From positions 248,001-312,000 of the forward strand of contig NC_135250.1 of assembly GCF_964204865.1 (NCBI RefSeq): a stretch of DNA of 64,000 nt, given 5' to 3'. Shown in pieces: positions 5,731-28,365 of this stretch (position 1 is its first letter; each line of letters begins with the position of its first letter). The DNA is from Styela clava. Lineage: Eukaryota. The notes beneath the pieces are model-generated. The model was not told where the DNA came from, made no database searches, and saw nothing but the letters and a program-made list of their open reading frames with translations. Made by a program: the position numbers and the translations under genes.

Positions 5731-5870
5731 CCAAATAAGGGCACCGGTATTGCGTCGTGCGTATTGCATTCTGATATCATAATAGCATTAGACTCCATAA
5801 AAGGGCATAAGTTATACGTCTAACCAATCAGAAACGAGCAAAACAATACAGGAAACAGGAAGTGACGTTT
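5731..5870 (+). promoter_or_regulatory. Actin-type promoter: two CArG boxes, a CCAAT box and an ETS-like site
   Basis: CCAAATAAGG 5731-5740 and CCATAAAAGG 5795-5804 match CC(A/T)6GG; CCAAT 5824-5828; CAGGAAGTG ~5857-5865. CArG plus CCAAT is the established architecture of cytoplasmic actin promoters. Confidence 0.65.
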
Positions 5871-5899
5871 CATGCGGGCGGCGCCTTGTTGCTGTCGAA

Positions 5900-6078
5900 A
5901 TTGCAGGCTTACTAGAAGCGTTCGTTTCATTTTGTGTCTGTCTATCGAAGAGAGTGCGGAGAGCCGGCTCGTCAAAGAGGAGTTCTTGGAAAAATCGCAA
6001 CACTTTGACAAAAATGTAACTTTTGAAAAATCGAAAGATTCGTACTAACAAGTGATCAAAGGATTGATGATACAGAAG
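5900..6078 (+). other. Probable non-coding first exon of the actin locus (start approximate)
   Basis: Lies just downstream of the CArG/CCAAT cluster and ends in donor AAG|GTTAGT at 6078/6079. The nearest strong acceptor ahead of an actin ATG is TTTCTCTATTTACAG| at 10967. Confidence 0.5.
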
Positions 6079-9000
6079 GTTAGTGTGGTTTACTTTAATA
6101 CTTGTCGCAGAAACTTTGTTCCGAATTTAAATTTATGAAATCTCTGTTGCACCGATGAACCTGTATACAGCTAGTCAGCTAGTATATATACATAGAGGAT
6201 AGTATTTTGTATTCAGTACTTCTCACAGAACATGGATCAAAATGTCTGGCATCCCTTTTGCATTAATAATTTCATATATATACAATTTATACCATTTATT
6301 TATATTGTATAATTAGGCGTTAAAAATGGTGGTAGCTTGATTTATTTTTAATCGGGAGTTCGGAACCTAGCTTCGAGCAAACTTATTTGAAAAACATATG
6401 CTAAAGTATTCCTCATGTTGGTTGTCGGTGATATTAAGTTTGTTCAATTTTTTACGAAACTCCAAGATTAATTGACAAGAAATTTATAGATTTTGCCAAT
6501 TCAAGAATAAAGTATATTGGATTTAAAAATCATAATCGAGAATAGAGATTTCTGTTATAGGTATATCACTGTGAGTTACTCTATAACATTTTAGTACATT
6601 ATGCCCATTGAACTGTTAATATCAGAATATAGTGATGAAAAGTGTTAACACACCTAGAATAACAATTACCAAGACCCTAGGGTGTGATATAAATGATTGT
6701 TCTACGTCAGACCTACAAATTTAGTCCTTAGAAAATATTAGCTCTTTACGTTCCAATGTCGGGTGGTCTAAAGCCATGTTCGTATTAGTTCGAATTAAAT
6801 TAACGAGTCTTCAAAAAAATTTGACTATTCTAATCGTTGACGTTTCTGGGTTAGACCAGCGCACCCAGAGAGTGATAAGTACGTTGCGTTTAGGTAGCCA
6901 AAATGTTTTGATACTTTTACAAATATGGTGGCTTTAACTTTTAAGCAGTGCTCACCAAGGGCCTTACTTGGAGTGAGTATGTGTGAAACATCAAAGTATA
7001 ATTCATGAATGGCCAAGCATGGGGGGCGTCATTTATCATCGGCCCGTTTTAAAAATAAAAATTTCGAAAATTTTATTATTTTAATTAACAGTAGAAGTTC
7101 AGAGCCTTGCGCATCGTGTCAATATGAAATAATATTCATTACCCGACGCAATGTTGTAAATCAGTAAATCATATTTTAACATATGGGTGTGAAAATCTAT
7201 TGTCAGTTATAAATATCATTTTAATGCTAAAGTAGGCATCATAAGAGAACCTACTAAATGGTATTCGTCTTGAATCAGAATATAAACAAGCAAGCATAAG
7301 GTTTGTATAAATCGTAGGTTCATGCAAAAGCAGGTAAAGCTCTTCCGTTTAATGTTTGCTCTGAACAAGAACCAGTAGTACGAGTAATATAATATCGGTG
7401 GGCTTTTTGCGGAACGGCCATTTGTAAGCGAGAGAAATCTCGGATACTATGCAATTTTACTCAATATATCGTTTTTAAACATCCCTTTTATTTGGGGGGA
7501 GGGAGGGATTTTTTCATAGCCCCACCTCGTCGCCCACCTGGGATATTATGACTTAACATTTTCGTATTATGACGTTGAGCTGTAAATTTTTTTACCATAT
7601 ACTCCCACTACCATCATGGCAATTTTTTTCTAGTATTATTTTTCTAGTATTTTCAAATACCTGAACGTCGACATTAGCCTTAGTAATAAATATCTTATGA
7701 ATATAGATATATAGCGGGCTGGTGTTACACGATAACTTCGAAAACTTAGTTGAAAGAGGGAGAGCGTTCTGAAAATTGTTTATATTTAGAAAATTAGCTG
7801 AGTGAAATGGAACAAAAATCTAAGTTAAATGCTAAATTGTATGCGCTGGTTTACGTTCTCCGATTCCCTAACCCAGAATGAATTCTTGTGAGCGTAATAT
7901 GCATTAATGCAAAAGTATTTTAGTCGTTTAATCTTCTGTTAGATTGTGTTTTTTGGATTAATTTGCAAAATTGATGACATTCACTATTGTAGAAAAGAAA
8001 GGGCGATCATGACGTTGTGTGGTATTTATTTCCGAATAATTGTAGTTACTCGTAAGTTATGACGTAACAGATACGTCACAATGAGTTATTTGAGCTTCCC
8101 GGCTGGATTTCCGCGCCAAATAAAGCACGGAACATCTACACTGCGAGATTTGTCTTCTGAAGTAAACTCAACCAAGTTTGGTTAGAATTAAGTCAGAGAT
8201 TATCTAAATCTAAGATTCCAACTTGAAGCCAAATCGTACTACGCCCAGAAACATGCATTAGTAATTAGTTATTGACCAGCAAATCGTGCTTCGTTGTCAA
8301 TATTTTTGTGAAAACTGAGATCCGTGATTTATGGTTTCGAGTTATTTCTTGAATTAATCTCCGACAGTCGTGTCTGTAGTTCGTTTCCAACATTAGCAAG
8401 GGTGTCTCAGACCATGAAAAGGGACTTTCTCATTTATATTAGACTTGTAGCAGATGCTTGTGAAGTAACATTAGTTTTATGAAGGAATTAATAGATAAAT
8501 AAATTCAATGAGTCCCGAAAATAAAAATATCATTAAGTGTGGAGAAAAGGGAAATTTTTTGTAATGAATGTACAATCCTTAACTTATTATAAACTATAAA
8601 AACGGGATTCAGGATTTGTTTGAAATTATGATTTTGGAAGCTTTTCTAAAATTTTGTGAGCGGCTAAACAAAACCTATATGCTCAACATCAGAATGTTTT
8701 TTTTTAATGGGAGACATTTAAAAATATAATATCGTATTAACTGTATGAGACACCTTTTACTTGCTGGCTTCGGGGCGAGGCAATATATCGTTAAAAAATT
8801 CCGGCTTTTTTAAAATTAGTTCCACATGTATCAGTGTATGCTTGTATAGAGCCTTGTTTGGAACTAAAGTCGTGATTACGTCGTTTAAAAGCGATGATTT
8901 ACTGTATTGATATCGGAATTCCCTTCCAAAATAAATTAATTAACAATTAATCCTATCTTAATCGTGCACGACGGAAAACAAACATCGGCATAATCCCAAA

Positions 9001-9125
9001 ACATCTGGCAAGTGTTTAAATCGATCGAGATTTCGTGGGGCGTGGCAATGTGTTTCCTTCCGTCAGATGGTGCAAGAGACACCAACAAACCGTGACAGCT
9101 CATTTCCGCGACCCGGTCTCTCATT

Positions 9126-9135
9126 CCATATATGG
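9126..9135. promoter_or_regulatory. CArG box in the presumed first intron
   Basis: CCATATATGG, perfect consensus. Confidence 0.4.
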
Positions 9136-10458
9136 CAACGATGCCTACTAGAGTCAGCACGTCTTGTGTATGACTAGCAGTCGCACTGTGGCCTAGCCCA
9201 GTGATACAGAAAGACATTAGTTAGATTATCATGCATTTGTGAGAGGACGGTAGCACTTATGAAAGATAAATCTCAGCTTGGTGTCAGTTAGTAGATATTG
9301 CTCGTACTAGCAAACAGTCTTCTATGAACGTATATTATATATCGTGCTACTCTTAGATATTGAGACACAAGATGGGCAATAATGGGGCAGCCATATTTTG
9401 ATGATATGATCAGCAATGCTTTGAGATATATATTAAAAGAATGAAATACAGCTTTTGGATTAATATTAGAAATGTCAGCTAAATTCAGTTTGACAAAATT
9501 CAATTCTTTATGGGGCTCAATCTGGTATATAGTTACTTCAATGAGTAAACTTAGAACATTCTAAATCGAAGAAAACCTGGTAAGGGAATCCTAGAACATT
9601 GAGCTATCGGGAAATATATAAAACCAGACATAGTTAAGTATTGCAGGCAAATCATGCTTATTGACATATTGACGCGACCTCACTACGTGAAATTGATTGT
9701 ATTATATCAGTCGTTTATCCCAAGGGATGTGATGGCTGGACAATGACCAGTAAACAACGAGCGCTGTATATGGCAAACAGACGTTATTAATGATTTAATG
9801 TCTCACGGCCTTGCTAAACATAATAGATTGACCACTTGTTCTCAGAGTGTTGTCAAGAACGTTTTTGATACGGGATCATTAATTAATATAATTGAAATAC
9901 TAATAAATTTATAATATATATATTGCCGCGATATATCAAAGCGATTGGAGCCATATTGAAAATGAAGCGTCGGGATTAAAAGGTAATTTTCGTCGGTCAA
10001 TGTAGCCTCCTGCTAATGTTGATGCCAGCGGATTACAATTTGTCCTATTTTTAATCTTACTAGATTCGTTTGCCCGTGATGAACAGATTCTTTTTCTGAG
10101 CGAAGTTTCTATCTCAAATATCTGTTACCAAGATTCAGGTGTAACAGCTAAGACTTCTTGACGGTCTGTAGATATCCGCTCAAATAGAAGTCTCGTCGTG
10201 ACGTTAAAATCACATAAAATCGACGTTTATTTTTAACAGCGTGCAGACGACGCCTTGCAAACGCTGCCAAAAATTTGAAATCGAAGCAAATTTCCTTCCG
10301 CACAAATCAGTTACGTAATGCCTGAGGCAAAGTAAAATCGATACCAAACATCTTGCTAAATTGCGCAGCGAGGCCAACTTCATTGTGATTAGTCTACCGC
10401 GATCAATCAGTGCAATTCAATAGTAACGTCTTCTAATGAGTTCGAAAGTGTCTGATTG

Positions 10459-10468
10459 CCTTTTATGG
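10459..10468. promoter_or_regulatory. CArG box in the presumed first intron
   Basis: CCTTTTATGG, perfect consensus, ~500 bp before the first actin acceptor. Confidence 0.4.
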
Positions 10469-11011
10469 AAATGGACGGTAAAGTGTATTGCGTATGGACA
10501 ACCCGACAAAGCACTATACTAGCTTCAGTTTAGAAGTATCCATAAGCGTCTTTGATAGGGCTTGAATAAGAAAGTGATCTAATGCTACAAACGCGCTGGA
10601 ACAATACACGCGATGAGGAAAGCCTACAAATATAAAAAAAAAACTTCACATTGTACCTGTAATACAGCATAAACCTTAACCCCATCGACAGCTTGAGTGT
10701 TGTCATATATATTAGCGTATATTGATAGGATCTTAGTGAGGGAGTGACTGAATGGGGAATAAATACTGTTTTGGGGCTTAAGGTGGGGGTAATTCAATCC
10801 TACAAATTGTTGGTATATTACACGCAAAAGCATGCCCTCAAATATGGAAAATGCTTCCTTTCCTATACTGACCCTTCCAAATGCATAAACTTCTTCGATG
10901 TATAGAATCCGCGATTCGATGGCTTTGTTTTTGCAACACGACTCACAAAATCTTTCTCTATTTACAGAAAATATAGAACAGTCCGCAGTGTGAATTGTTA
11001 GTTTCGACAAC

Positions 11012-14000
11012 ATGGCTCCAGCGATCATCATTGATAGCGGTTCGGCCAACACCAAGCTTGGCTCGACTGGCGATGAGGAACCACGAACAGTGCTCCCCAC
11101 GGTTTCCATCAGTGATAAGAAAACGGTAAGTGCACATTGATTTAATTAATTATCCGCGTGGGAATTGATTGTCGACTCCACTAAATAATTCAACTACACA
11201 GTTACCTGGATCTTTTATTGATTGAAAACTCATGGCGTTGAAAATTGTCGATTCATAATGTCCCGCCAGTACTTTGGAATCAGGTTTTCCAGACTTTTCT
11301 CGCAACAGTTCGATTATGGAATAGATTTTGACTGATATGCGACGTAATTTTGAGATTATGTTCCGATTCTATGATTGCTTGTCTTTTATTCAAAGCGAAG
11401 TTACAGCAAGCCATATAAAGAGCCTCCAGTATCGGCGAATACTGTGATTTATCAGTAATTTTACTGTTTTCTCACAGTGCAGCTGATCGAAATTTCTAAA
11501 TTATTTACAAAACCATTCCTCGGAGTTTCCCCCTGCGAGTGGTTACTTGGTTATGCAAGGATTCATATAGGTCTAAAATGAATTGGGTATTCGAATCGAG
11601 TCGGAAAAAATGTTACATGGTTCTTTCCGCGTTGAATACTTGACTTGGTTACGTCTTGGTTAATTACTCATATTTACCGCAAAACTCCAGTTAATTTAAC
11701 AATTTTTCACAGTTTTAGTAAATATAAACATCGTTACTGTTTTATATTGAACACTGTTATCCCCACACATGGCCCAACGTAAATCAGGCTTCAATTATCT
11801 CTTCCAACTATCACCCATGCTATATCGTGTGATAATGCAAACCATATCTCCTTAGGATGTTTATATTTAAAACAGAACAATCTCGATTTCCTTTCCAAGG
11901 GGGCGATTATACAGATGATGCTTTATCATTATAGATACGACCCTGATACAGTAGCTTCCTGTTACACGGACACTAGTTTCAATAATCAAAATTCCCAAGA
12001 GCAAAATTATCCCTTTCTATCACAGCGTTTGATTGAGCGAGGACTCGTCACAAACTGGGATGAAATTGAGAAATTCTGGCAACACTGTATTGAGAATGAA
12101 TTGAAGATGGATCCGACACAGAATCCGATATTTCTCACAGAGCCGCCTCTCAACCCACAGGTATGCAAGTGGTGCTAGGGATTTGTGGAGTCGGAATAAA
12201 GTTTTACTCAGAACTCCGGATCCGGTTTGATACGACTCGTGAATTTCATATAAATCCTAGCCCGATTCGGTGCTGTTCTGATATTGTCCCACCAATAATT
12301 TTTGATCTGCTTCCTTCGATTCTGTTTATGTTGGGTTGGGATAAGTGGGAAGATGGGATTAGACCTTTTCAAACCTAAGACAAACAGAATCGAGTAGAAC
12401 AGGTCAATAAAAATGGCGGTGGGCTAATATAAGAACAGTAACCTAACCCTGTCCGCGGCATGATGTAAATCTCAACTCGCAGTCGAAAAACTTTTTTAAG
12501 GTGGTAAAAAAAAATTTAAACTCTGACTTCAACATTGGCAGAGTAGCCAGCTTAGATTGCTCTATTATTCCCATCCAGCCAAATTCTTATCAGCGTTAAC
12601 TTATAAATGCGGTTTGCATACATGTTGAATAGGATAACTTCTCTCAACACCGTAAAATTAAGATTAGATGTTTGCTCAAAGTAAGGTCACACGTATTCTC
12701 TTCAAAGTAAAGGAGTGCCATCTCATGCGAAGTTGAAGGCAACATCTGAAATTACAAGAGCAACTTACTGAAACAATTTGGAATATTGTGGTGCAATGCG
12801 CGCCGATACACGAGATTTCAAACAACTCATATTAATATTAATACGACAACTGATGTCCTTCGCCACTAAGACGCAATACTTTATTTTCCAAAGCTTGCTA
12901 AAGTTTCAAATTTTTATCTAACGCGACTCTTTTTCAATTCTTAGAAAGATCGCGAAAGACAAGCAACAATGTTATTCGAGAAGTTCAACACTCCCAAGAT
13001 GTCTTTCGGATTCCAGCCTGTACTGGCACTCTACGCCTATGGAAAGATGGCAGGTAAATAATAGCACAAGTCAATAATTAACAAGAAAATAACGCCACCT
13101 CCCATATTAACAATATTAGTGAGTAAATGAAAAAAACCAACTAAAGGGGACTGCAGGGCATTTTCAAGAGTCCTAATTTTATTCGAAACCTAAAAAATAT
13201 CATACAATCTCATCTCGGAAATAAGCTTTCAAGTTTTTTCTAAATATCTGCAGTTTTTCGTTATTGCTGAATCTGCATCCACGGAAACTCTCAACCACCT
13301 CTTGTACTCATAATATATCACTATCTACGGCTCTCTAACGCCTCCTGTGTCCAACTTCATATCTGGTCTATAACCGTGATAACTCTCTACCACTTACCAT
13401 GTCTAATTTTGTTAATAATATTGATGAGGAGCTATATATTCAAGTATCTACCGCCTACTGCGTATGATTTTTTTAGATAATACTTTATCCCCATGTTGGC
13501 AACTCTCATTACTTACTGTACTTACTTGAAGTATACTTTATTATATACCACTCCTTATTTACCAGGTTTTGTGCTTGACATCGGGTACGGCACGATGCAA
13601 GCGGTTCCATGTGAAGCGGGATTCTTCGTTCCAAAATCCTACAAAAGATCCAACCATGCGGGACAGGATCTGGACTTCCGTCTCAAGGAGATGATGCAAT
13701 CAAAAGGATGTGACGTCAGTTTAGAAGGTAAATAGAGCGTAAAATTGTCAATTTCCAAAAAAAGATACCGCTGAAAAATCTCTATTCCGACAAGGAATTG
13801 GATGTTTAGAGATTATACAACTAAAACGGTCTTTCCTGGTTGTACTTGCTACTCAGTTTAGTTCTATCACGGACAAGTGTGGAATGGAAAATAGAAACTT
13901 TTTCGATCGAAAAAATCCAAATTACTAACAGAATTTCAACCTATTCCCAGTTGCGAGTGACATTAAGGAGAAGCTTTGTTACGCCACACAAGATTACGAT

Positions 14001-15244
14001 GCGGAAATGAAGAAAGCTGAAGACAACAAACAATACAAACTTCCTGATGGAAAGGTGAAATGTCACATTATTGTGGTTTTTTGAATACCTCATTAATTTT
14101 AGGCGGCCGACTTTCCAGGTTTGCATATAGGAAGATAGCCAATATTAGAAAAATACCGCATTCTGTCATATTTTAACATAGCCAAGTAAATATTCGATTT
14201 TTACAAAAGAAGAGTATCTCTTCCCAGCTTTAAATCTTTGACATCGTCACTCATACGTTGATGCCTCTTGTCACCCTCAACTAGCTACCTCAATACAAAA
14301 TGACCTAAAATCCGGGAAAATTTATTTTTCAGGAAATAGCTATTGGGAGGGAGCGATTCCAGTGCCCGGAACATCTCTTTCAGCCTCAGTTGGGCGGAAG
14401 TGACGTACCCAGCGTTCAGAAGTTGGTTTGTGACGCGGTGGAAACACAGGGCGACAAAACAATGTTCGAGAATATCGTGCTGACAGGAGGATCCACAATG
14501 TTTCCAGGTGAAGACATTTATAATTCAAGTACAAATGAATATAACCATCACGCCCTAAAACGAGCATTCTAGATTACAAGCATCAACTGAAGCGTTAAGC
14601 AACGTCCCTAACCATTTTTTTTTTGGTATATCACTCAAACTAATTCAAAATGAAAAAAAAAAACTTAAACAAAACAGGCCTAAAAGGATCACACAACAAT
14701 GAATCTACGGCTACGATCTAACATATTCAAGGGCACTGGCCCACCAAATCTCTTGTCATCAAATTATTTTGTTGGTCATGTTAAAAAATATTGGCGTATT
14801 GGCACTTGAACTATAGCCCCGTGAAGATATCATGACGTAACTTTTTGCATTTTGGTGTTCGATTTGCAATACGAAATCACTTCATTATTTATTCCGATTT
14901 TGAGACCTCCCCATCAATTTTTTTTATATTGTGACAACATGTGTCTAGCTCTGTGTAACGTAAAAGTTTGTAATTTTTGATTTCAATTAACCCCATCAAG
15001 TTCTTCAAACAACATCACGATAAAACTTTGTTTCAACTTTACAGGAATAAAAGAGCGGATTGGAAAGGAAATAACGGCGTCGTTGCATTCACAGAAAGTG
15101 ACAATCCAAGCCCATGATACCCGGAAGTTCAGTTCGTTCATCGGTTCTGCGATTCTAACCGCCCTTCCGACCTTTGAACCCCTCTGGATCACAAAACAAC
15201 AGTACGAAGAGATCGGCACTGGCGTTGTCGCAAAGATCGAATAA
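11012..15244 (+). CDS. Highly divergent actin-like protein, 7 coding exons (332 aa, or 374 aa with the upstream exon-2 acceptor)
   Basis: Exons 11012-11125, 12026 (or 11900)-12160, 12945-13053, 13566-13727, 13951-14054, 14333-14507, 15045-15244; all GT-AG; short model 999 nt in frame. Motifs [70 protein letters not shown]. Same six intron positions and phases as the neighbouring actins. Confidence 0.88.

Positions 15245-16073: not shown

Positions 16074-19569
<3,496 letters not shown>

Positions 19570-20569: not shown

Positions 20570-23814
<3,245 letters not shown>

Positions 23815-25060: not shown

Positions 25061-28365
<3,305 letters not shown>

What the first reader, a model, noticed from the sequence alone, without database searches (positions are those of the whole stretch)
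11012..12160. Tandem actin paralog whose subdomain 2 (D-loop) is deleted or completely replaced, with alternative in-frame acceptors
Seen: after exon 1 (...VLPTVSISDKKT) similarity resumes only at RLIERGLVTNWD; the block [28 protein letters not shown] has no counterpart. Acceptor CCCTTTCTATCACAG|12026 removes it (332 aa). Acceptor TTTCCTTTCCAAG|11900 is in the same open frame and inserts 42 unrelated residues (GAIIQMMLYHYRYDPD...; 374 aa). Known: subdomain 2 and the D-loop make the longitudinal filament contact and bind DNase I. Inference: a non-polymerising or filament-capping actin that arose by local duplication (all six intron positions are shared with the neighbours), with the ORF kept intact despite extreme divergence.
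Basis: partly seen in the sequence, partly recalled or inferred. Interest (0 to 1): 0.75.

Follow-up and report, generated by a model that had tools for sequence, protein, structure and literature searches.

The report
Sea-squirt actin copy missing subdomain 2
Next to three ordinary actin genes, the sea squirt Styela clava carries an expressed and conserved actin copy that has lost the lobe actin uses to link up along a filament, so it probably cannot build filaments and instead binds partners through its intact opposite face.

Summary
The gene at 11012-15244 (+) has seven coding exons. It is 43.6% identical to the canonical actin beside it and shares all six intron positions and phases with it.

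Spliced contigs from 4 of 4 runs (3 studies) join 11125 directly to 12026. The mRNA therefore lacks 27 residues, alpha-actin 42-68: the D-loop and almost all of subdomain 2. The product is identical to RefSeq XP_039274621.2, "actin-like isoform X2 [Styela clava]", 332 aa.

A 332-aa orthologue from an unnamed source is 74% identical and has the same deletion. No other relative turned up. Polymorphism in the contigs gives pN/pS of about 0.18. AlphaFold models both proteins at pLDDT 95 as an actin fold.

It is closer to conventional actin than to every Arp compared; Arp2 was not compared.

The proposed in-frame acceptor at 11900 was not used in any run. The only alternative acceptor seen, 11935, shifts the frame.

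Between the two orthologues the barbed-face cleft is nearly invariant, while the hydrophobic plug has decayed.

My reading: a lineage-restricted, non-polymerising actin-fold protein that acts through that cleft. This function is inferred, not tested. Two earlier scan notes touch this array; neither covers this gene.

The parts
5795..5804 (+). CC(A/T)6GG (CArG-like) box CCATAAAAGG upstream of the 5' non-coding exon. A CCAAT motif lies about 20 nt further on.
   Evidence: Read. That this is an SRF-type motif is recalled knowledge. No function was tested.
5902..6078 (+). 5' non-coding exon. The start is approximate. It is followed by a 4.9-kb intron, 6079-10967.
   Evidence: contigs of all 4 runs carry 120-177 extra letters before about 10966; the 30-letter consensus matches 6047-6076 exactly and only once. 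GT follows at 6079-6080. The start is inferred from the longest loose end (177 letters) and was not verified letter by letter.
10968..11125 (+). Exon holding the start codon. The CDS runs 11012-11125, 38 codons, and corresponds to actin residues up to 41.
   Evidence: Pfam Actin, E 6.2e-06; contig pieces 10966-11124/5 in 4 of 4 runs.
11126..12025 (+). Intron 1, 900 nt. It holds the unused in-frame AGs before 11876, 11900, 11915 and 12002, and the minor out-of-frame acceptor before 11935.
   Evidence: the junction that skips these 900 nt (GT..AG) is present in 4 of 4 runs. The junction to 11935 appears in X6 only (29 letters on the short side). One search lists the AG sites.
11783..12025 (+). 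81 stop-free codons in the frame of exon 2, lying inside intron 1. Unexplained.
   Evidence: only about 1% of YAG| sites in the window have 81 or more open codons upstream. No RNA contig covers 11194-11928.
12026..12160 (+). Exon 2, 45 codons. It begins where canonical exon 2 would be 27 codons in, so actin residues 42-68 are absent.
   Evidence: (Actin, E 1.9e-11 for the longer 87-aa frame).
12945..13053 (+). Exon 3. It ends in phase 1, in the codon of G150.
   Evidence: (junction in 4 of 4 runs).
13566..13727 (+). Exon 4, holding the second phosphate loop DIGYGTMQ. It is the most diverged exon, 15 of 53 residues identical to the neighbour.
   Evidence: It is single copy in the genome.
13951..14054 (+). 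Exon 5.
14333..14507 (+). Exon 6. It ends in phase 1, in the codon of G308.
15045..15244 (+). Exon 7 coding part, with the stop TAA at 15242-15244. The 3' UTR runs beyond 15300.
   Evidence: One search shows this junction in 3 of 4 runs; the X1 contig stops 17 letters into exon 7.
16098..19569 (+). Canonical actin neighbour N1 (start codon to stop), with the same six introns.
20585..23814 (+). Canonical actin neighbour N2.
25076..28365 (+). Canonical actin neighbour N3.

Best explanation
This is a real, expressed and selectively maintained paralogue of conventional actin in Styela clava. It arose by tandem duplication at the head of a four-gene actin array. Its exon 2 now starts 27 codons later than in its neighbours. 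The loss begins exactly at the old intron 1/exon 2 border, so a downstream shift of the splice acceptor is the simplest origin (inferred).

The 332-aa protein keeps subdomains 1, 3 and 4 and most of the nucleotide pocket. Subdomain 2 is reduced from 37 residues to about 11, and there is no D-loop.

Mechanism I commit to (inferred): it cannot propagate an actin filament. Three things point that way: the D-loop contact is gone, the hydrophobic plug is not conserved, and the two residues H161 and D157 are replaced. It acts instead as a nucleotide-bound actin-fold module through its barbed face. The hydrophobic cleft between subdomains 1 and 3 and the C-terminal helix are the parts best conserved between the two orthologues.

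Two modes are possible:
(a) It binds, as a monomer, a helix or protein that normally docks in the actin cleft, acting as an adaptor or decoy, as nuclear Arps do. About 0.35.
(b) It sits on the pointed end of a filament, accepting the D-loop of the terminal subunit while offering none itself. About 0.2.

Shown: the gene, the splicing, the conservation and the predicted fold. Inferred: every functional step.
For: Splicing and expression:
- contigs of 4 of 4 runs (3 studies) join 11125 to 12026.
- The same contigs join four of the other five coding junctions in 4 of 4 runs and the last in 3 of 4.
- All 4 carry a spliced 5' leader that maps to 6047-6076.

Identity:
- P0124 (XP_039274621.2) equals the window's exon translations end to end. 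One search found every exon piece inside it, and one search gives the alignment.

Origin:
- Tandem position, same strand, 6 of 6 shared intron positions and phases.
- 142 of 326 aligned residues (43.6%) are identical to neighbour N1.

Constraint:
- P0005 is 74% identical, 332 aa, with the same deletion.
- Contig differences are 9 synonymous to 6 non-synonymous over 210.7 synonymous and 776.3 non-synonymous sites. Binomial P = 0.0013.
- Identity between the orthologues is uneven: SD1 119/139, SD3 59/95, SD4 53/80, chi-square P = 7.5e-05.

Surfaces:
- Cleft residues are 13 of 14 identical between orthologues and 9 of 14 identical to canonical actin.
- Residues 341-355 are 14 of 15 identical between orthologues; the plug 262-274 only 5 of 13.
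- Q137, K18, D154, G156, G158 and GGSTMF are kept. H161 is Q in both, and D157 is Y or R.

Fold:
- AlphaFold gives pLDDT 95.0, pTM 0.92 for P0124 and 95.2, 0.91 for P0005.
- Foldseek's top hits are actins with TMq up to 0.95.
- VIA-align gives actin Z 44.5, rmsd 1.2 over 322 residues.

D-loop role: passages read in PMC12472444.
Against: - No experiment or binding data exists, and tissue and stage of expression are unknown because the runs are coded.
- The runs are only guessed to be RNA. The splicing of their contigs is my ground for calling them RNA.
- Only two species-level sequences exist, so surface conservation rests on one pairwise comparison.
- No dN/dS between species was possible because the DNA of P0005 could not be fetched.
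- Against pointed-end docking: the parts of subdomain 3 that I recall contacting the next subunit (283-294, 322-328) and the lateral contacts (plug, 191-199) are poorly conserved. The C-terminal F375 is missing.
- K336 is N in P0005, so nucleotide binding is not assured in both.
- A common P-to-L change in the RFQCPE motif occurs in contigs of 3 of 4 runs, which speaks for looser constraint than in actin.
- High pLDDT partly reflects the deep actin alignment given to the predictor.
- The 81 open codons upstream of 12026 are not explained.
Confidence: 0.5

Rival explanations
1. The functional product is a long isoform, made in a tissue or stage not sampled. It would use an upstream in-frame acceptor (11876, 11900 or 11915) and carry a novel, replaced subdomain 2. 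The short form would be one of several isoforms.
For: The frame of exon 2 stays open for 81 codons upstream of 12026. Only about 1% of YAG| sites in the window reach that. The AG before 11900 follows a pyrimidine-rich tract.
Against: -: none of the contigs of 4 runs (3 studies) uses these sites or covers 11194-11928.
- The orthologue P0005 is also the short form, 332 aa.
- RefSeq models only the short form and the 11935 form.
- The 42 residues show no likeness to subdomain 2.
- 39 of the 81 open codons lie upstream of 11900, where no isoform needs them, so at least part of the open run is chance.
- Contigs drop rare variants, so absence is not proven.
Confidence: 0.1
2. It is a transcribed but functionally dispensable duplicate on its way to decay. 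The deletion would simply be a splicing accident that was tolerated.
For: - It is 43.6% identical to neighbours that are nearly identical to one another.
- Contig depth is low beside actin, though the tool warns that depth is a poor measure.
- There are six non-synonymous polymorphisms, including P to L in a conserved motif.
- Only one orthologue was found.
Against: - The 332-codon frame is intact in two lineages that differ at 26% of residues, with identical length and indel pattern.
- pN/pS is about 0.18, P = 0.0013.
- Conservation is concentrated in subdomain 1 and the cleft rather than spread evenly.
- All splice sites are used correctly in every run that covers them.
Confidence: 0.1
3. 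It still enters ordinary actin filaments as a rare subunit, as a co-polymerising isoform or a barbed-end terminator. In that case it would make its longitudinal contact through subdomain 4 alone.
For: The subdomain 4 tip KLPDGKE is identical in both orthologues (7 of 7) and 4 of 7 identical to actin. The overall fold is that of actin.
Against: - The D-loop contact is described as the stable longitudinal link (passages in PMC12713339 and PMC12472444), and here it is absent.
- The plug and the other lateral contacts are not conserved.
- There is a 4-residue deletion next to 200-204 in subdomain 4.
Confidence: 0.1
4. It is a member of one of the ancient, conserved Arp subfamilies (Arp1-Arp11) and was mislabelled.
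For: Identity to actin (about 44%) is in the range I recall for Arp1 and Arp2. In the tree it joins an ACTL7A sequence weakly (SH-aLRT 86), which the tool flags as long branches meeting.
Against: - S. clava has its own Arp1, Arp3 and ACTL6A/Arp4 elsewhere.
- P0124 is 34% identical to that Arp1, against 43.6% to actin.
- In the tree it is separate from Arp1, Arp3 and Arp4.
- Chains from Arp3, Arp4, Arp8, Arp7/9, ACTL6A and other remodeller or dynactin entries are 17-30% identical.
- The top 60 PDB sequence hits are all conventional actins.
- Intron positions and chromosomal place tie it to the actin array.
- Arp2 was not compared.
Confidence: 0.02

Closest known systems
Conventional (cytoplasmic-type) actin, i.e. 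the three neighbours in the window
   Same: - Actin fold: Pfam PF00022 hits every exon.
- Best PDB sequence and structure matches.
- Six identical intron positions and phases.
- Q137, the GGSTMF adenine loop, LPDG, and most hydrophobic cleft residues are kept.
   Different: - Only 43.6% identical.
- 27 residues of subdomain 2, including the D-loop, are absent from the mRNA.
- Four more small deletions (4, 4, 4 and 3 residues), plus single-residue gaps in exon 7.
- H161 is Q, D157 is Y or R, H73 is R, and the C-terminal F375 is missing.
- The hydrophobic plug is not conserved.
Ancient actin-related proteins (Arp1, Arp3, Arp4/ACTL6A, Arp8, Arp7/9 and others in solved complexes)
   Same: They share the actin fold with altered surfaces, and most do not form actin-like filaments. 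Nuclear Arps use the barbed-face cleft to bind a helix of their remodeller. That point is recalled, in line with the ACTL7 modelling passages in PMC10925299.
   Different: - It is not orthologous to those tested.
- It is restricted to two sources, not conserved across eukaryotes.
- As far as I recall, Arps keep or enlarge subdomain 2, whereas this protein removes it.
Lineage-specific actin/Arp duplicates, such as the obscura-group Arps of Drosophila (PMC7038667) and vertebrate ACTL7A/B (PMC10925299)
   Same: These are young or lineage-restricted duplicates of actin or an Arp that evolve fast yet keep the fold. For PMC7038667 I saw the start of the abstract in the search listing and two passages.
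   Different: - Those paralogues are reported as testis-specific; the tissue here is unknown.
- No removal of a whole subdomain is mentioned in the passages I read.
- This one arose by tandem DNA duplication with its introns kept. Arp2D arose by retroduplication (section heading seen).
Plasmodium actin-like protein Alp1 (bioRxiv 10.64898/2026.07.14.737759)
   Same: It is an actin-family protein with a naturally shortened D-loop (residues 43-48 missing relative to actin) and changes in subdomain 4 around LPDG (passages read).
   Different: Alp1 loses about 6 residues of the loop only. This protein loses 27 residues, so the helix and strand of subdomain 2 go too. The two belong to different lineages and arose independently.

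Membership tests
Actin superfamily fold (Pfam PF00022 Actin) | Sequence match to the Actin profile over the whole length | tested here: met
   7 of 7 exon translations hit PF00022 (E from 7.3e-15 to 0.0028). On their own, 3 of the 7 exceed the 27-bit cut-off. The precomputed Pfam entry for P0001 and P0005 is PF00022.
Actin superfamily fold (Pfam PF00022 Actin) | Four-subdomain actin/Hsp70/hexokinase-type ATPase fold | tested here: inconclusive
   The predicted models superpose on actin: Z 44.5, rmsd 1.2 over 322 residues, TMq up to 0.95. Subdomain 2 is reduced to about 11 residues, so three subdomains are complete and one is vestigial. This rests on prediction only.
Conventional, filament-forming actin | Very high sequence conservation (the neighbours are near-identical to each other and to actins of other phyla) | tested here: not met
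   142 of 326 aligned residues (43.6%) match neighbour N1. Identity to the database actins retrieved is 35-44%.
Conventional, filament-forming actin | Complete subdomain 2 with the DNase I-binding loop that makes the longitudinal contact | tested here: not met
   The mRNA junction 11125 to 12026 is present in 4 of 4 runs. The K18-W79 spacing is 33 residues, against 60 in 170 of 220 family members.
Conventional, filament-forming actin | Nucleotide-binding and hydrolysis residues (the list is recalled: S14, K18, Q137, D154, G156, D157, G158, H161, K213, E214, G301-F306, K336) | tested here: inconclusive
   S14, K18, Q137, D154, G156, G158, K213, E214 and GGSTMF are kept. D157 is Y or R and H161 is Q in both orthologues. 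K336 is kept in S. clava but is N in P0005.
Conventional, filament-forming actin | Polymerisation into F-actin | not testable with these tools
   Needs purified protein.
Ancient Arp subfamilies (Arp1-Arp11) | Orthology to one subfamily (closer to it than to actin) | tested here: not met
   - Arp1: 34% identity and a separate branch.
- Arp3 and Arp4/ACTL6A: separate in the tree and 25-30% identical by structure alignment.
- Arp8, Arp7/9 and other remodeller or dynactin chains: 17-25%.
- Arp2: not compared. Arp5, Arp6 and Arp10/11: compared only as far as unnamed chains of such entries appear.
Ancient Arp subfamilies (Arp1-Arp11) | Presence across eukaryotes | tested here: not met
   Only P0001/P0124 (S. 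clava) and P0005 (one unnamed source) were found in searches of 5.8 billion and 1.84 billion proteins. Those searches have stated limits: a word index, a length window and uneven tunicate coverage.
Lineage-specific actin-like paralogues (orphan Arps) | Derived from a recent or lineage-restricted duplication of actin or an Arp, fast-evolving, with the fold and ORF retained | tested here: met
   - Tandem array and shared introns.
- A long stem of 1.76 changes per column leading to a 100%-supported pair.
- Intact orthologue.
- pN/pS about 0.18.

The most novel reading that the evidence does not exclude
A natural "three-subdomain actin". It would be the first eukaryotic actin-family protein in which evolution has spliced out subdomain 2, kept by selection in styelid sea squirts as a dedicated terminator of actin filaments. 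It would dock by its intact barbed-face cleft onto the D-loop of the pointed-end subunit and offer no D-loop in return. That would make it a one-polypeptide pointed-end cap, made from actin itself by moving one splice acceptor.
Probability: 0.15. Interest if true: 0.8.

Novelty: new variant of a known kind. Interest (0 to 1): 0.55.

Why it matters
Actin is among the most constrained proteins known, and the D-loop of subdomain 2 is central to every model of filament assembly. A naturally selected, expressed actin paralogue with that lobe cleanly removed is an evolutionary experiment. It shows what the rest of the actin fold can do alone.

If it binds filament ends or cleft-binding partners, it would be a new kind of actin regulator made from actin itself. 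It would also be a ready-made non-polymerising actin scaffold for structural work.

It also illustrates how a shift of one splice acceptor can delete a whole structural element without breaking the protein.

If it proves to have little function, it is still a clear example of how far a tandem actin duplicate can drift while staying intact.

Tried and rejected
1. My own first reading was that the AG before 11900 is the true acceptor, because GAIIQM resembles GVMVGM, and that subdomain 2 is diverged rather than deleted. I rejected it. No contig uses that site, and the 42 residues score no better than shuffles against canonical subdomain 2.

2. A hidden exon in 11126-11899 encoding a normal D-loop is rejected. 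The contigs join 11125 to 12026 directly in 4 of 4 runs, with depth 0 over 11194-11928.

3. I wanted dN/dS against the orthologue. I used within-species contig differences instead and the uneven pattern of protein conservation.

4. The search for further orthologues found none:
- whole protein;
- N-terminal 90 residues only (4 hits among 49 candidates, 2 of them the family itself);
- profile of the family (4851 hits among 8000 scored, all others at 411 bits or less against 718-760);
- exon 4 against 1.84 billion representatives (4 hits, one at or below 1e-10, the other three a fused actin and two repeat proteins).

5. Paralogues in the genome: exon 4 is single copy, and the next matches are 30-35% identical with E of 0.3 or more.

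6. The tree has 42 rows: 37 hand-picked from the roughly 235 actin-family proteins then in hand, plus the two orthologues and three S. clava Arps. It used the quick method. 24 of 39 inner branches are unresolved. It shows only that the pair is separate from Arp1, Arp3 and Arp4. It does not place the pair within actins.

7. The protein atlas returned only generic actin clusters.

8. Literature. No paper describes this gene or a subdomain-2-less actin in these searches:
- ("Styela clava" + "actin-like"): 0;
- ("actin" + "lacks subdomain 2"): 0;
- nothing on point.
The S. clava genome paper PMC7540406 mentions actin only as a PCR and qPCR marker (2 passages). PMC12283931 and PMC2441452 were opened and were irrelevant. 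Papers outside the held library, and all supplementary files (closed, not requested), may hold more. The older ascidian actin-gene literature in subscription journals was not searchable.

9. The script stopped with an error after the local-alignment shuffles. Its global alignment and its intron-window control did not run and are not used.

The joined step was left out. All full-length work used database proteins returned by the tools: P0124, P0001 and P0005. P0124 contains every exon translation of the window.
Full report
WHAT IS THERE

The window carries four actin-family genes in tandem on the + strand. The finding's gene is at 11012-15244. Three canonical actins follow at 16098-19569, 20585-23814 and 25076-28365.

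The window is G000:C1:248001-312000 of a 377-Mb assembly. The protein it encodes is identical to a RefSeq protein of the sea squirt Styela clava, so I take the genome to be S. clava.

THE OBSERVATION

Exon 1 (11012-11125) encodes 38 residues and ends in phase 0 with a GT donor. Actin similarity resumes at 12026.

I aligned the gene exon by exon to neighbour N1:
- 142 of 326 aligned residues are identical (43.6%).
- 27 of the first 29 residues of canonical exon 2 have no counterpart.
- These 27 are alpha-actin residues 42-68. I numbered them as N1 index minus 1, which is a recalled convention.

All six introns lie at the same codon and phase as in the three neighbours: 41/42 phase 0, 113/114 phase 0, 150 phase 1, 204 phase 1, 246/247 phase 0 and 308 phase 1.

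Each of the 7 exon translations hits Pfam Actin.

The AG before 11900 is in frame and would add 42 residues. They are not like canonical subdomain 2: score 14, against a shuffle mean of 15.7.

WHICH ACCEPTOR IS USED

The look-up of sequencing runs listed nine small runs that hold 0.11-0.17 of the stretch's words, about the exonic share. They are labelled RNA only as a guess. I laid four of them, from three studies.

- In all four runs a contig joins 11125 to 12026 (GT..AG, skipping 900 nt).
- The same contigs join exons 2-3, 3-4, 4-5 and 5-6 in 4 of 4 runs and exons 6-7 in 3 of 4. The X1 contig ends 17 letters into exon 7.
- All four carry a 5' leader whose last 30 letters match 6047-6076 once and exactly. 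So there is a non-coding first exon and a 4.9-kb intron.
- Contigs spliced at GT..AG borders are what I take as proof that this is RNA.
- No contig covers 11194-11928, and none uses 11876, 11900 or 11915.
- One short contig in X6 joins 11125 to 11935 (29 letters on the short side). That adds 91 nt, shifts the frame and meets TGA at 11944-11946.

RefSeq's isoform X1 (P0125, 342 aa) is this same junction. It is rescued on paper by an out-of-frame ATG inside exon 1. Its first 17 residues equal the +1 frame of exon 1 and its next 31 equal the frame upstream of 12026. I regard it as a non-productive by-product.

Contigs can hide rare variants, so a rare long isoform is not excluded.

DATABASE IDENTITY AND RELATIVES

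Exon 4 alone, against 1.84 billion representatives, found one protein at or below 1e-10. This was P0001, 332 aa, "actin-like [Styela clava]". Its cluster holds three members:
- XP_039274621.1.
- XP_039274621.2 (P0124), which contains every exon translation of the window unchanged.
- Isoform X1 (P0125).

Searching with P0001 found P0005. It is 332 aa and 74% identical, and comes from one Logan contig of 3361 nt with no name. It has the same junction...DDKKT|GLIERG. The next hits are 40% identical actins.

Two further searches added nothing closer. In the genome the gene is single copy.

Of 238 actin-family proteins retrieved here, 220 have both anchors. The K18-W79 spacing is 60 in 170 of them. 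It is 33 only in these three sequences, and the next shortest is 46.

NOT A KNOWN ARP

- The 60 best PDB sequence matches are all conventional actins, at 262-282 bits.
- S. clava has its own Arp1, Arp3 and ACTL6A/Arp4 at other loci.
- P0124 is 34% identical to that Arp1.
- A quick tree of 42 rows puts P0124 and P0005 together (100) on a long stem, apart from Arp1, Arp3 and Arp4. It is otherwise unresolved.
- In a structure search over 48,161 representative chains, actin leads with Z 44.5, rmsd 1.2 and 43% identity.
- Chains from Arp3, Arp4, Arp8, Arp7/9, ACTL6A and other remodeller or dynactin entries are 17-30% identical.
- Arp2 was not compared.

IS IT MAINTAINED?

The two orthologues differ at about a quarter of positions. 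Yet they have the same length and the same indels relative to actin.

Within S. clava, the contig differences listed fall as 9 synonymous and 6 non-synonymous, on 210.7 and 776.3 sites. That gives pN/pS of about 0.18, binomial P = 0.0013. The numbers are small and include only the differences that the tool listed.

Conservation between the orthologues is uneven:
- subdomain 1: 119/139 (86%);
- remnant of subdomain 2: 9/11;
- subdomain 3: 59/95 (62%);
- subdomain 4: 53/80 (66%).
The chi-square P is 7.5e-05. The subdomain limits are recalled.

FOLD AND SURFACES

AlphaFold2, given actin alignments, predicts both proteins with pLDDT 95 and pTM 0.91-0.92. There are no low-confidence segments, and the short 30-40 link scores 92. 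The depth of the actin alignment surely helps that confidence.

Residue by residue (the residue lists are recalled from the actin literature):
- Kept: S14, K18, Q137, D154, G156, G158, K213, E214 and the GGSTMF loop.
- Replaced: D157 by Y or R, and H161 by Q, in both orthologues.
- K336 is N in P0005.
- The hydrophobic cleft between subdomains 1 and 3 is 9 of 14 identical to actin and 13 of 14 identical between orthologues.
- Residues 341-355 are 14 of 15 identical between orthologues.
- The hydrophobic plug is 4 of 13 identical to actin and 5 of 13 between orthologues.
- The subdomain 3 stretches 283-294 and 322-328 are changed.

The D-loop is described as the stable longitudinal link that inserts into the cleft of the next subunit (passages in PMC12713339 and PMC12472444).

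READING

Shown:
- a tandem duplicate of conventional actin;
- its mRNA lacks the D-loop and most of subdomain 2;
- it is expressed in several data sets;
- it is kept intact in two lineages;
- it is predicted to fold as actin.

Inferred:
- The loss came from a downstream move of the exon 2 acceptor, because it begins exactly at the old exon border.
- The protein cannot propagate a filament.
- It works through the conserved barbed-face cleft. Either it binds a cleft-docking partner as a monomer (my first choice), or it sits on the pointed end of a filament.
- The poor conservation of lateral and subdomain 3 contacts tips me towards the first.

Overall confidence in this reading is 0.5. That the gene and its short product are real is close to certain.

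UNEXPLAINED

The frame of exon 2 stays open for 81 codons upstream of the acceptor in use. Only about 1% of comparable sites in the window do so. This may be chance or may point to an unsampled isoform.

WHAT IS KNOWN

The protein exists in RefSeq only as an automatic "actin-like" model. I found no paper on it, or on any actin lacking subdomain 2, in seven searches. The library's limits apply, and supplements were closed.

The nearest known kinds are these:
- Lineage-specific actin/Arp duplicates such as those of the Drosophila obscura group (PMC7038667; abstract start and two passages).
- Plasmodium Alp1, whose D-loop is shortened by about six residues (bioRxiv 10.64898/2026.07.14.737759; passages).

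Two earlier notes of this scan touch the array:
- s1-817540 asks whether all four actin bodies hang off the first exon near 5.9 kb. I can only say that the diverged gene does.
- s1-810897 describes another diverged actin 3.7 Mb away. Its exon 4 equivalent is 30% identical to this one, so it is not close kin.

VERDICT

The finding is a new variant of a known kind. Interest is 0.55.

Noticed in passing
window 5795-6078: The diverged actin's mRNA starts in a non-coding exon that ends at 6078, 4.9 kb upstream of the start-codon exon. A CC(A/T)6GG box (CCATAAAAGG, 5795-5804) and a CCAAT motif lie just upstream. I did not test that.
   Followed up: partly
L003 425-1552 (+), L001 513-1751 (+), L002 479-1738 (-) = G000:C8, C13, C14: The S. 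clava Arp1, Arp3 and ACTL6A/Arp4 genes are each one uninterrupted ORF. Identity was confirmed against PDB chains at E 2.5e-216, 8e-253 and 3e-186. The actins in the window, by contrast, have six introns. Intronless Arps in an intron-rich genome may be old retrocopies that replaced the originals.
   Followed up: partly
window 11935 (acceptor) and RefSeq isoform X1 (P0125): RefSeq isoform X1 (342 aa) is built on a frame-shifting minor junction and an out-of-frame ATG inside exon 1. It lacks the first phosphate loop and looks like an annotation artefact.
   Followed up: yes
window 14367: A C>T change turns the conserved proline of the RFQCPE motif into leucine. It appears in contigs of 3 of 4 runs (X2, X7, X6), so it is a common allele in the sampled animals.
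   Followed up: partly
window 12506-12674, 12811-12957, 13105-13251: Low-depth contigs lie inside introns 2 and 3, with loose ends at 12924 and 13137 (X1, X2, X6). They may be unspliced precursor, repeats or other transcripts.
   Followed up: no
It keeps the profile region of subdomain 2 and is only 30% identical to this gene in exon 4.
   Followed up: partly
G000, many contigs: The genome holds dozens of actin loci with at least three different intron patterns: one intron near profile position 292-300, one near 144, and the six-intron pattern of this window, which also occurs at C1:20607907-20611880. Several are in tandem arrays on C6 and C8.
   Followed up: no
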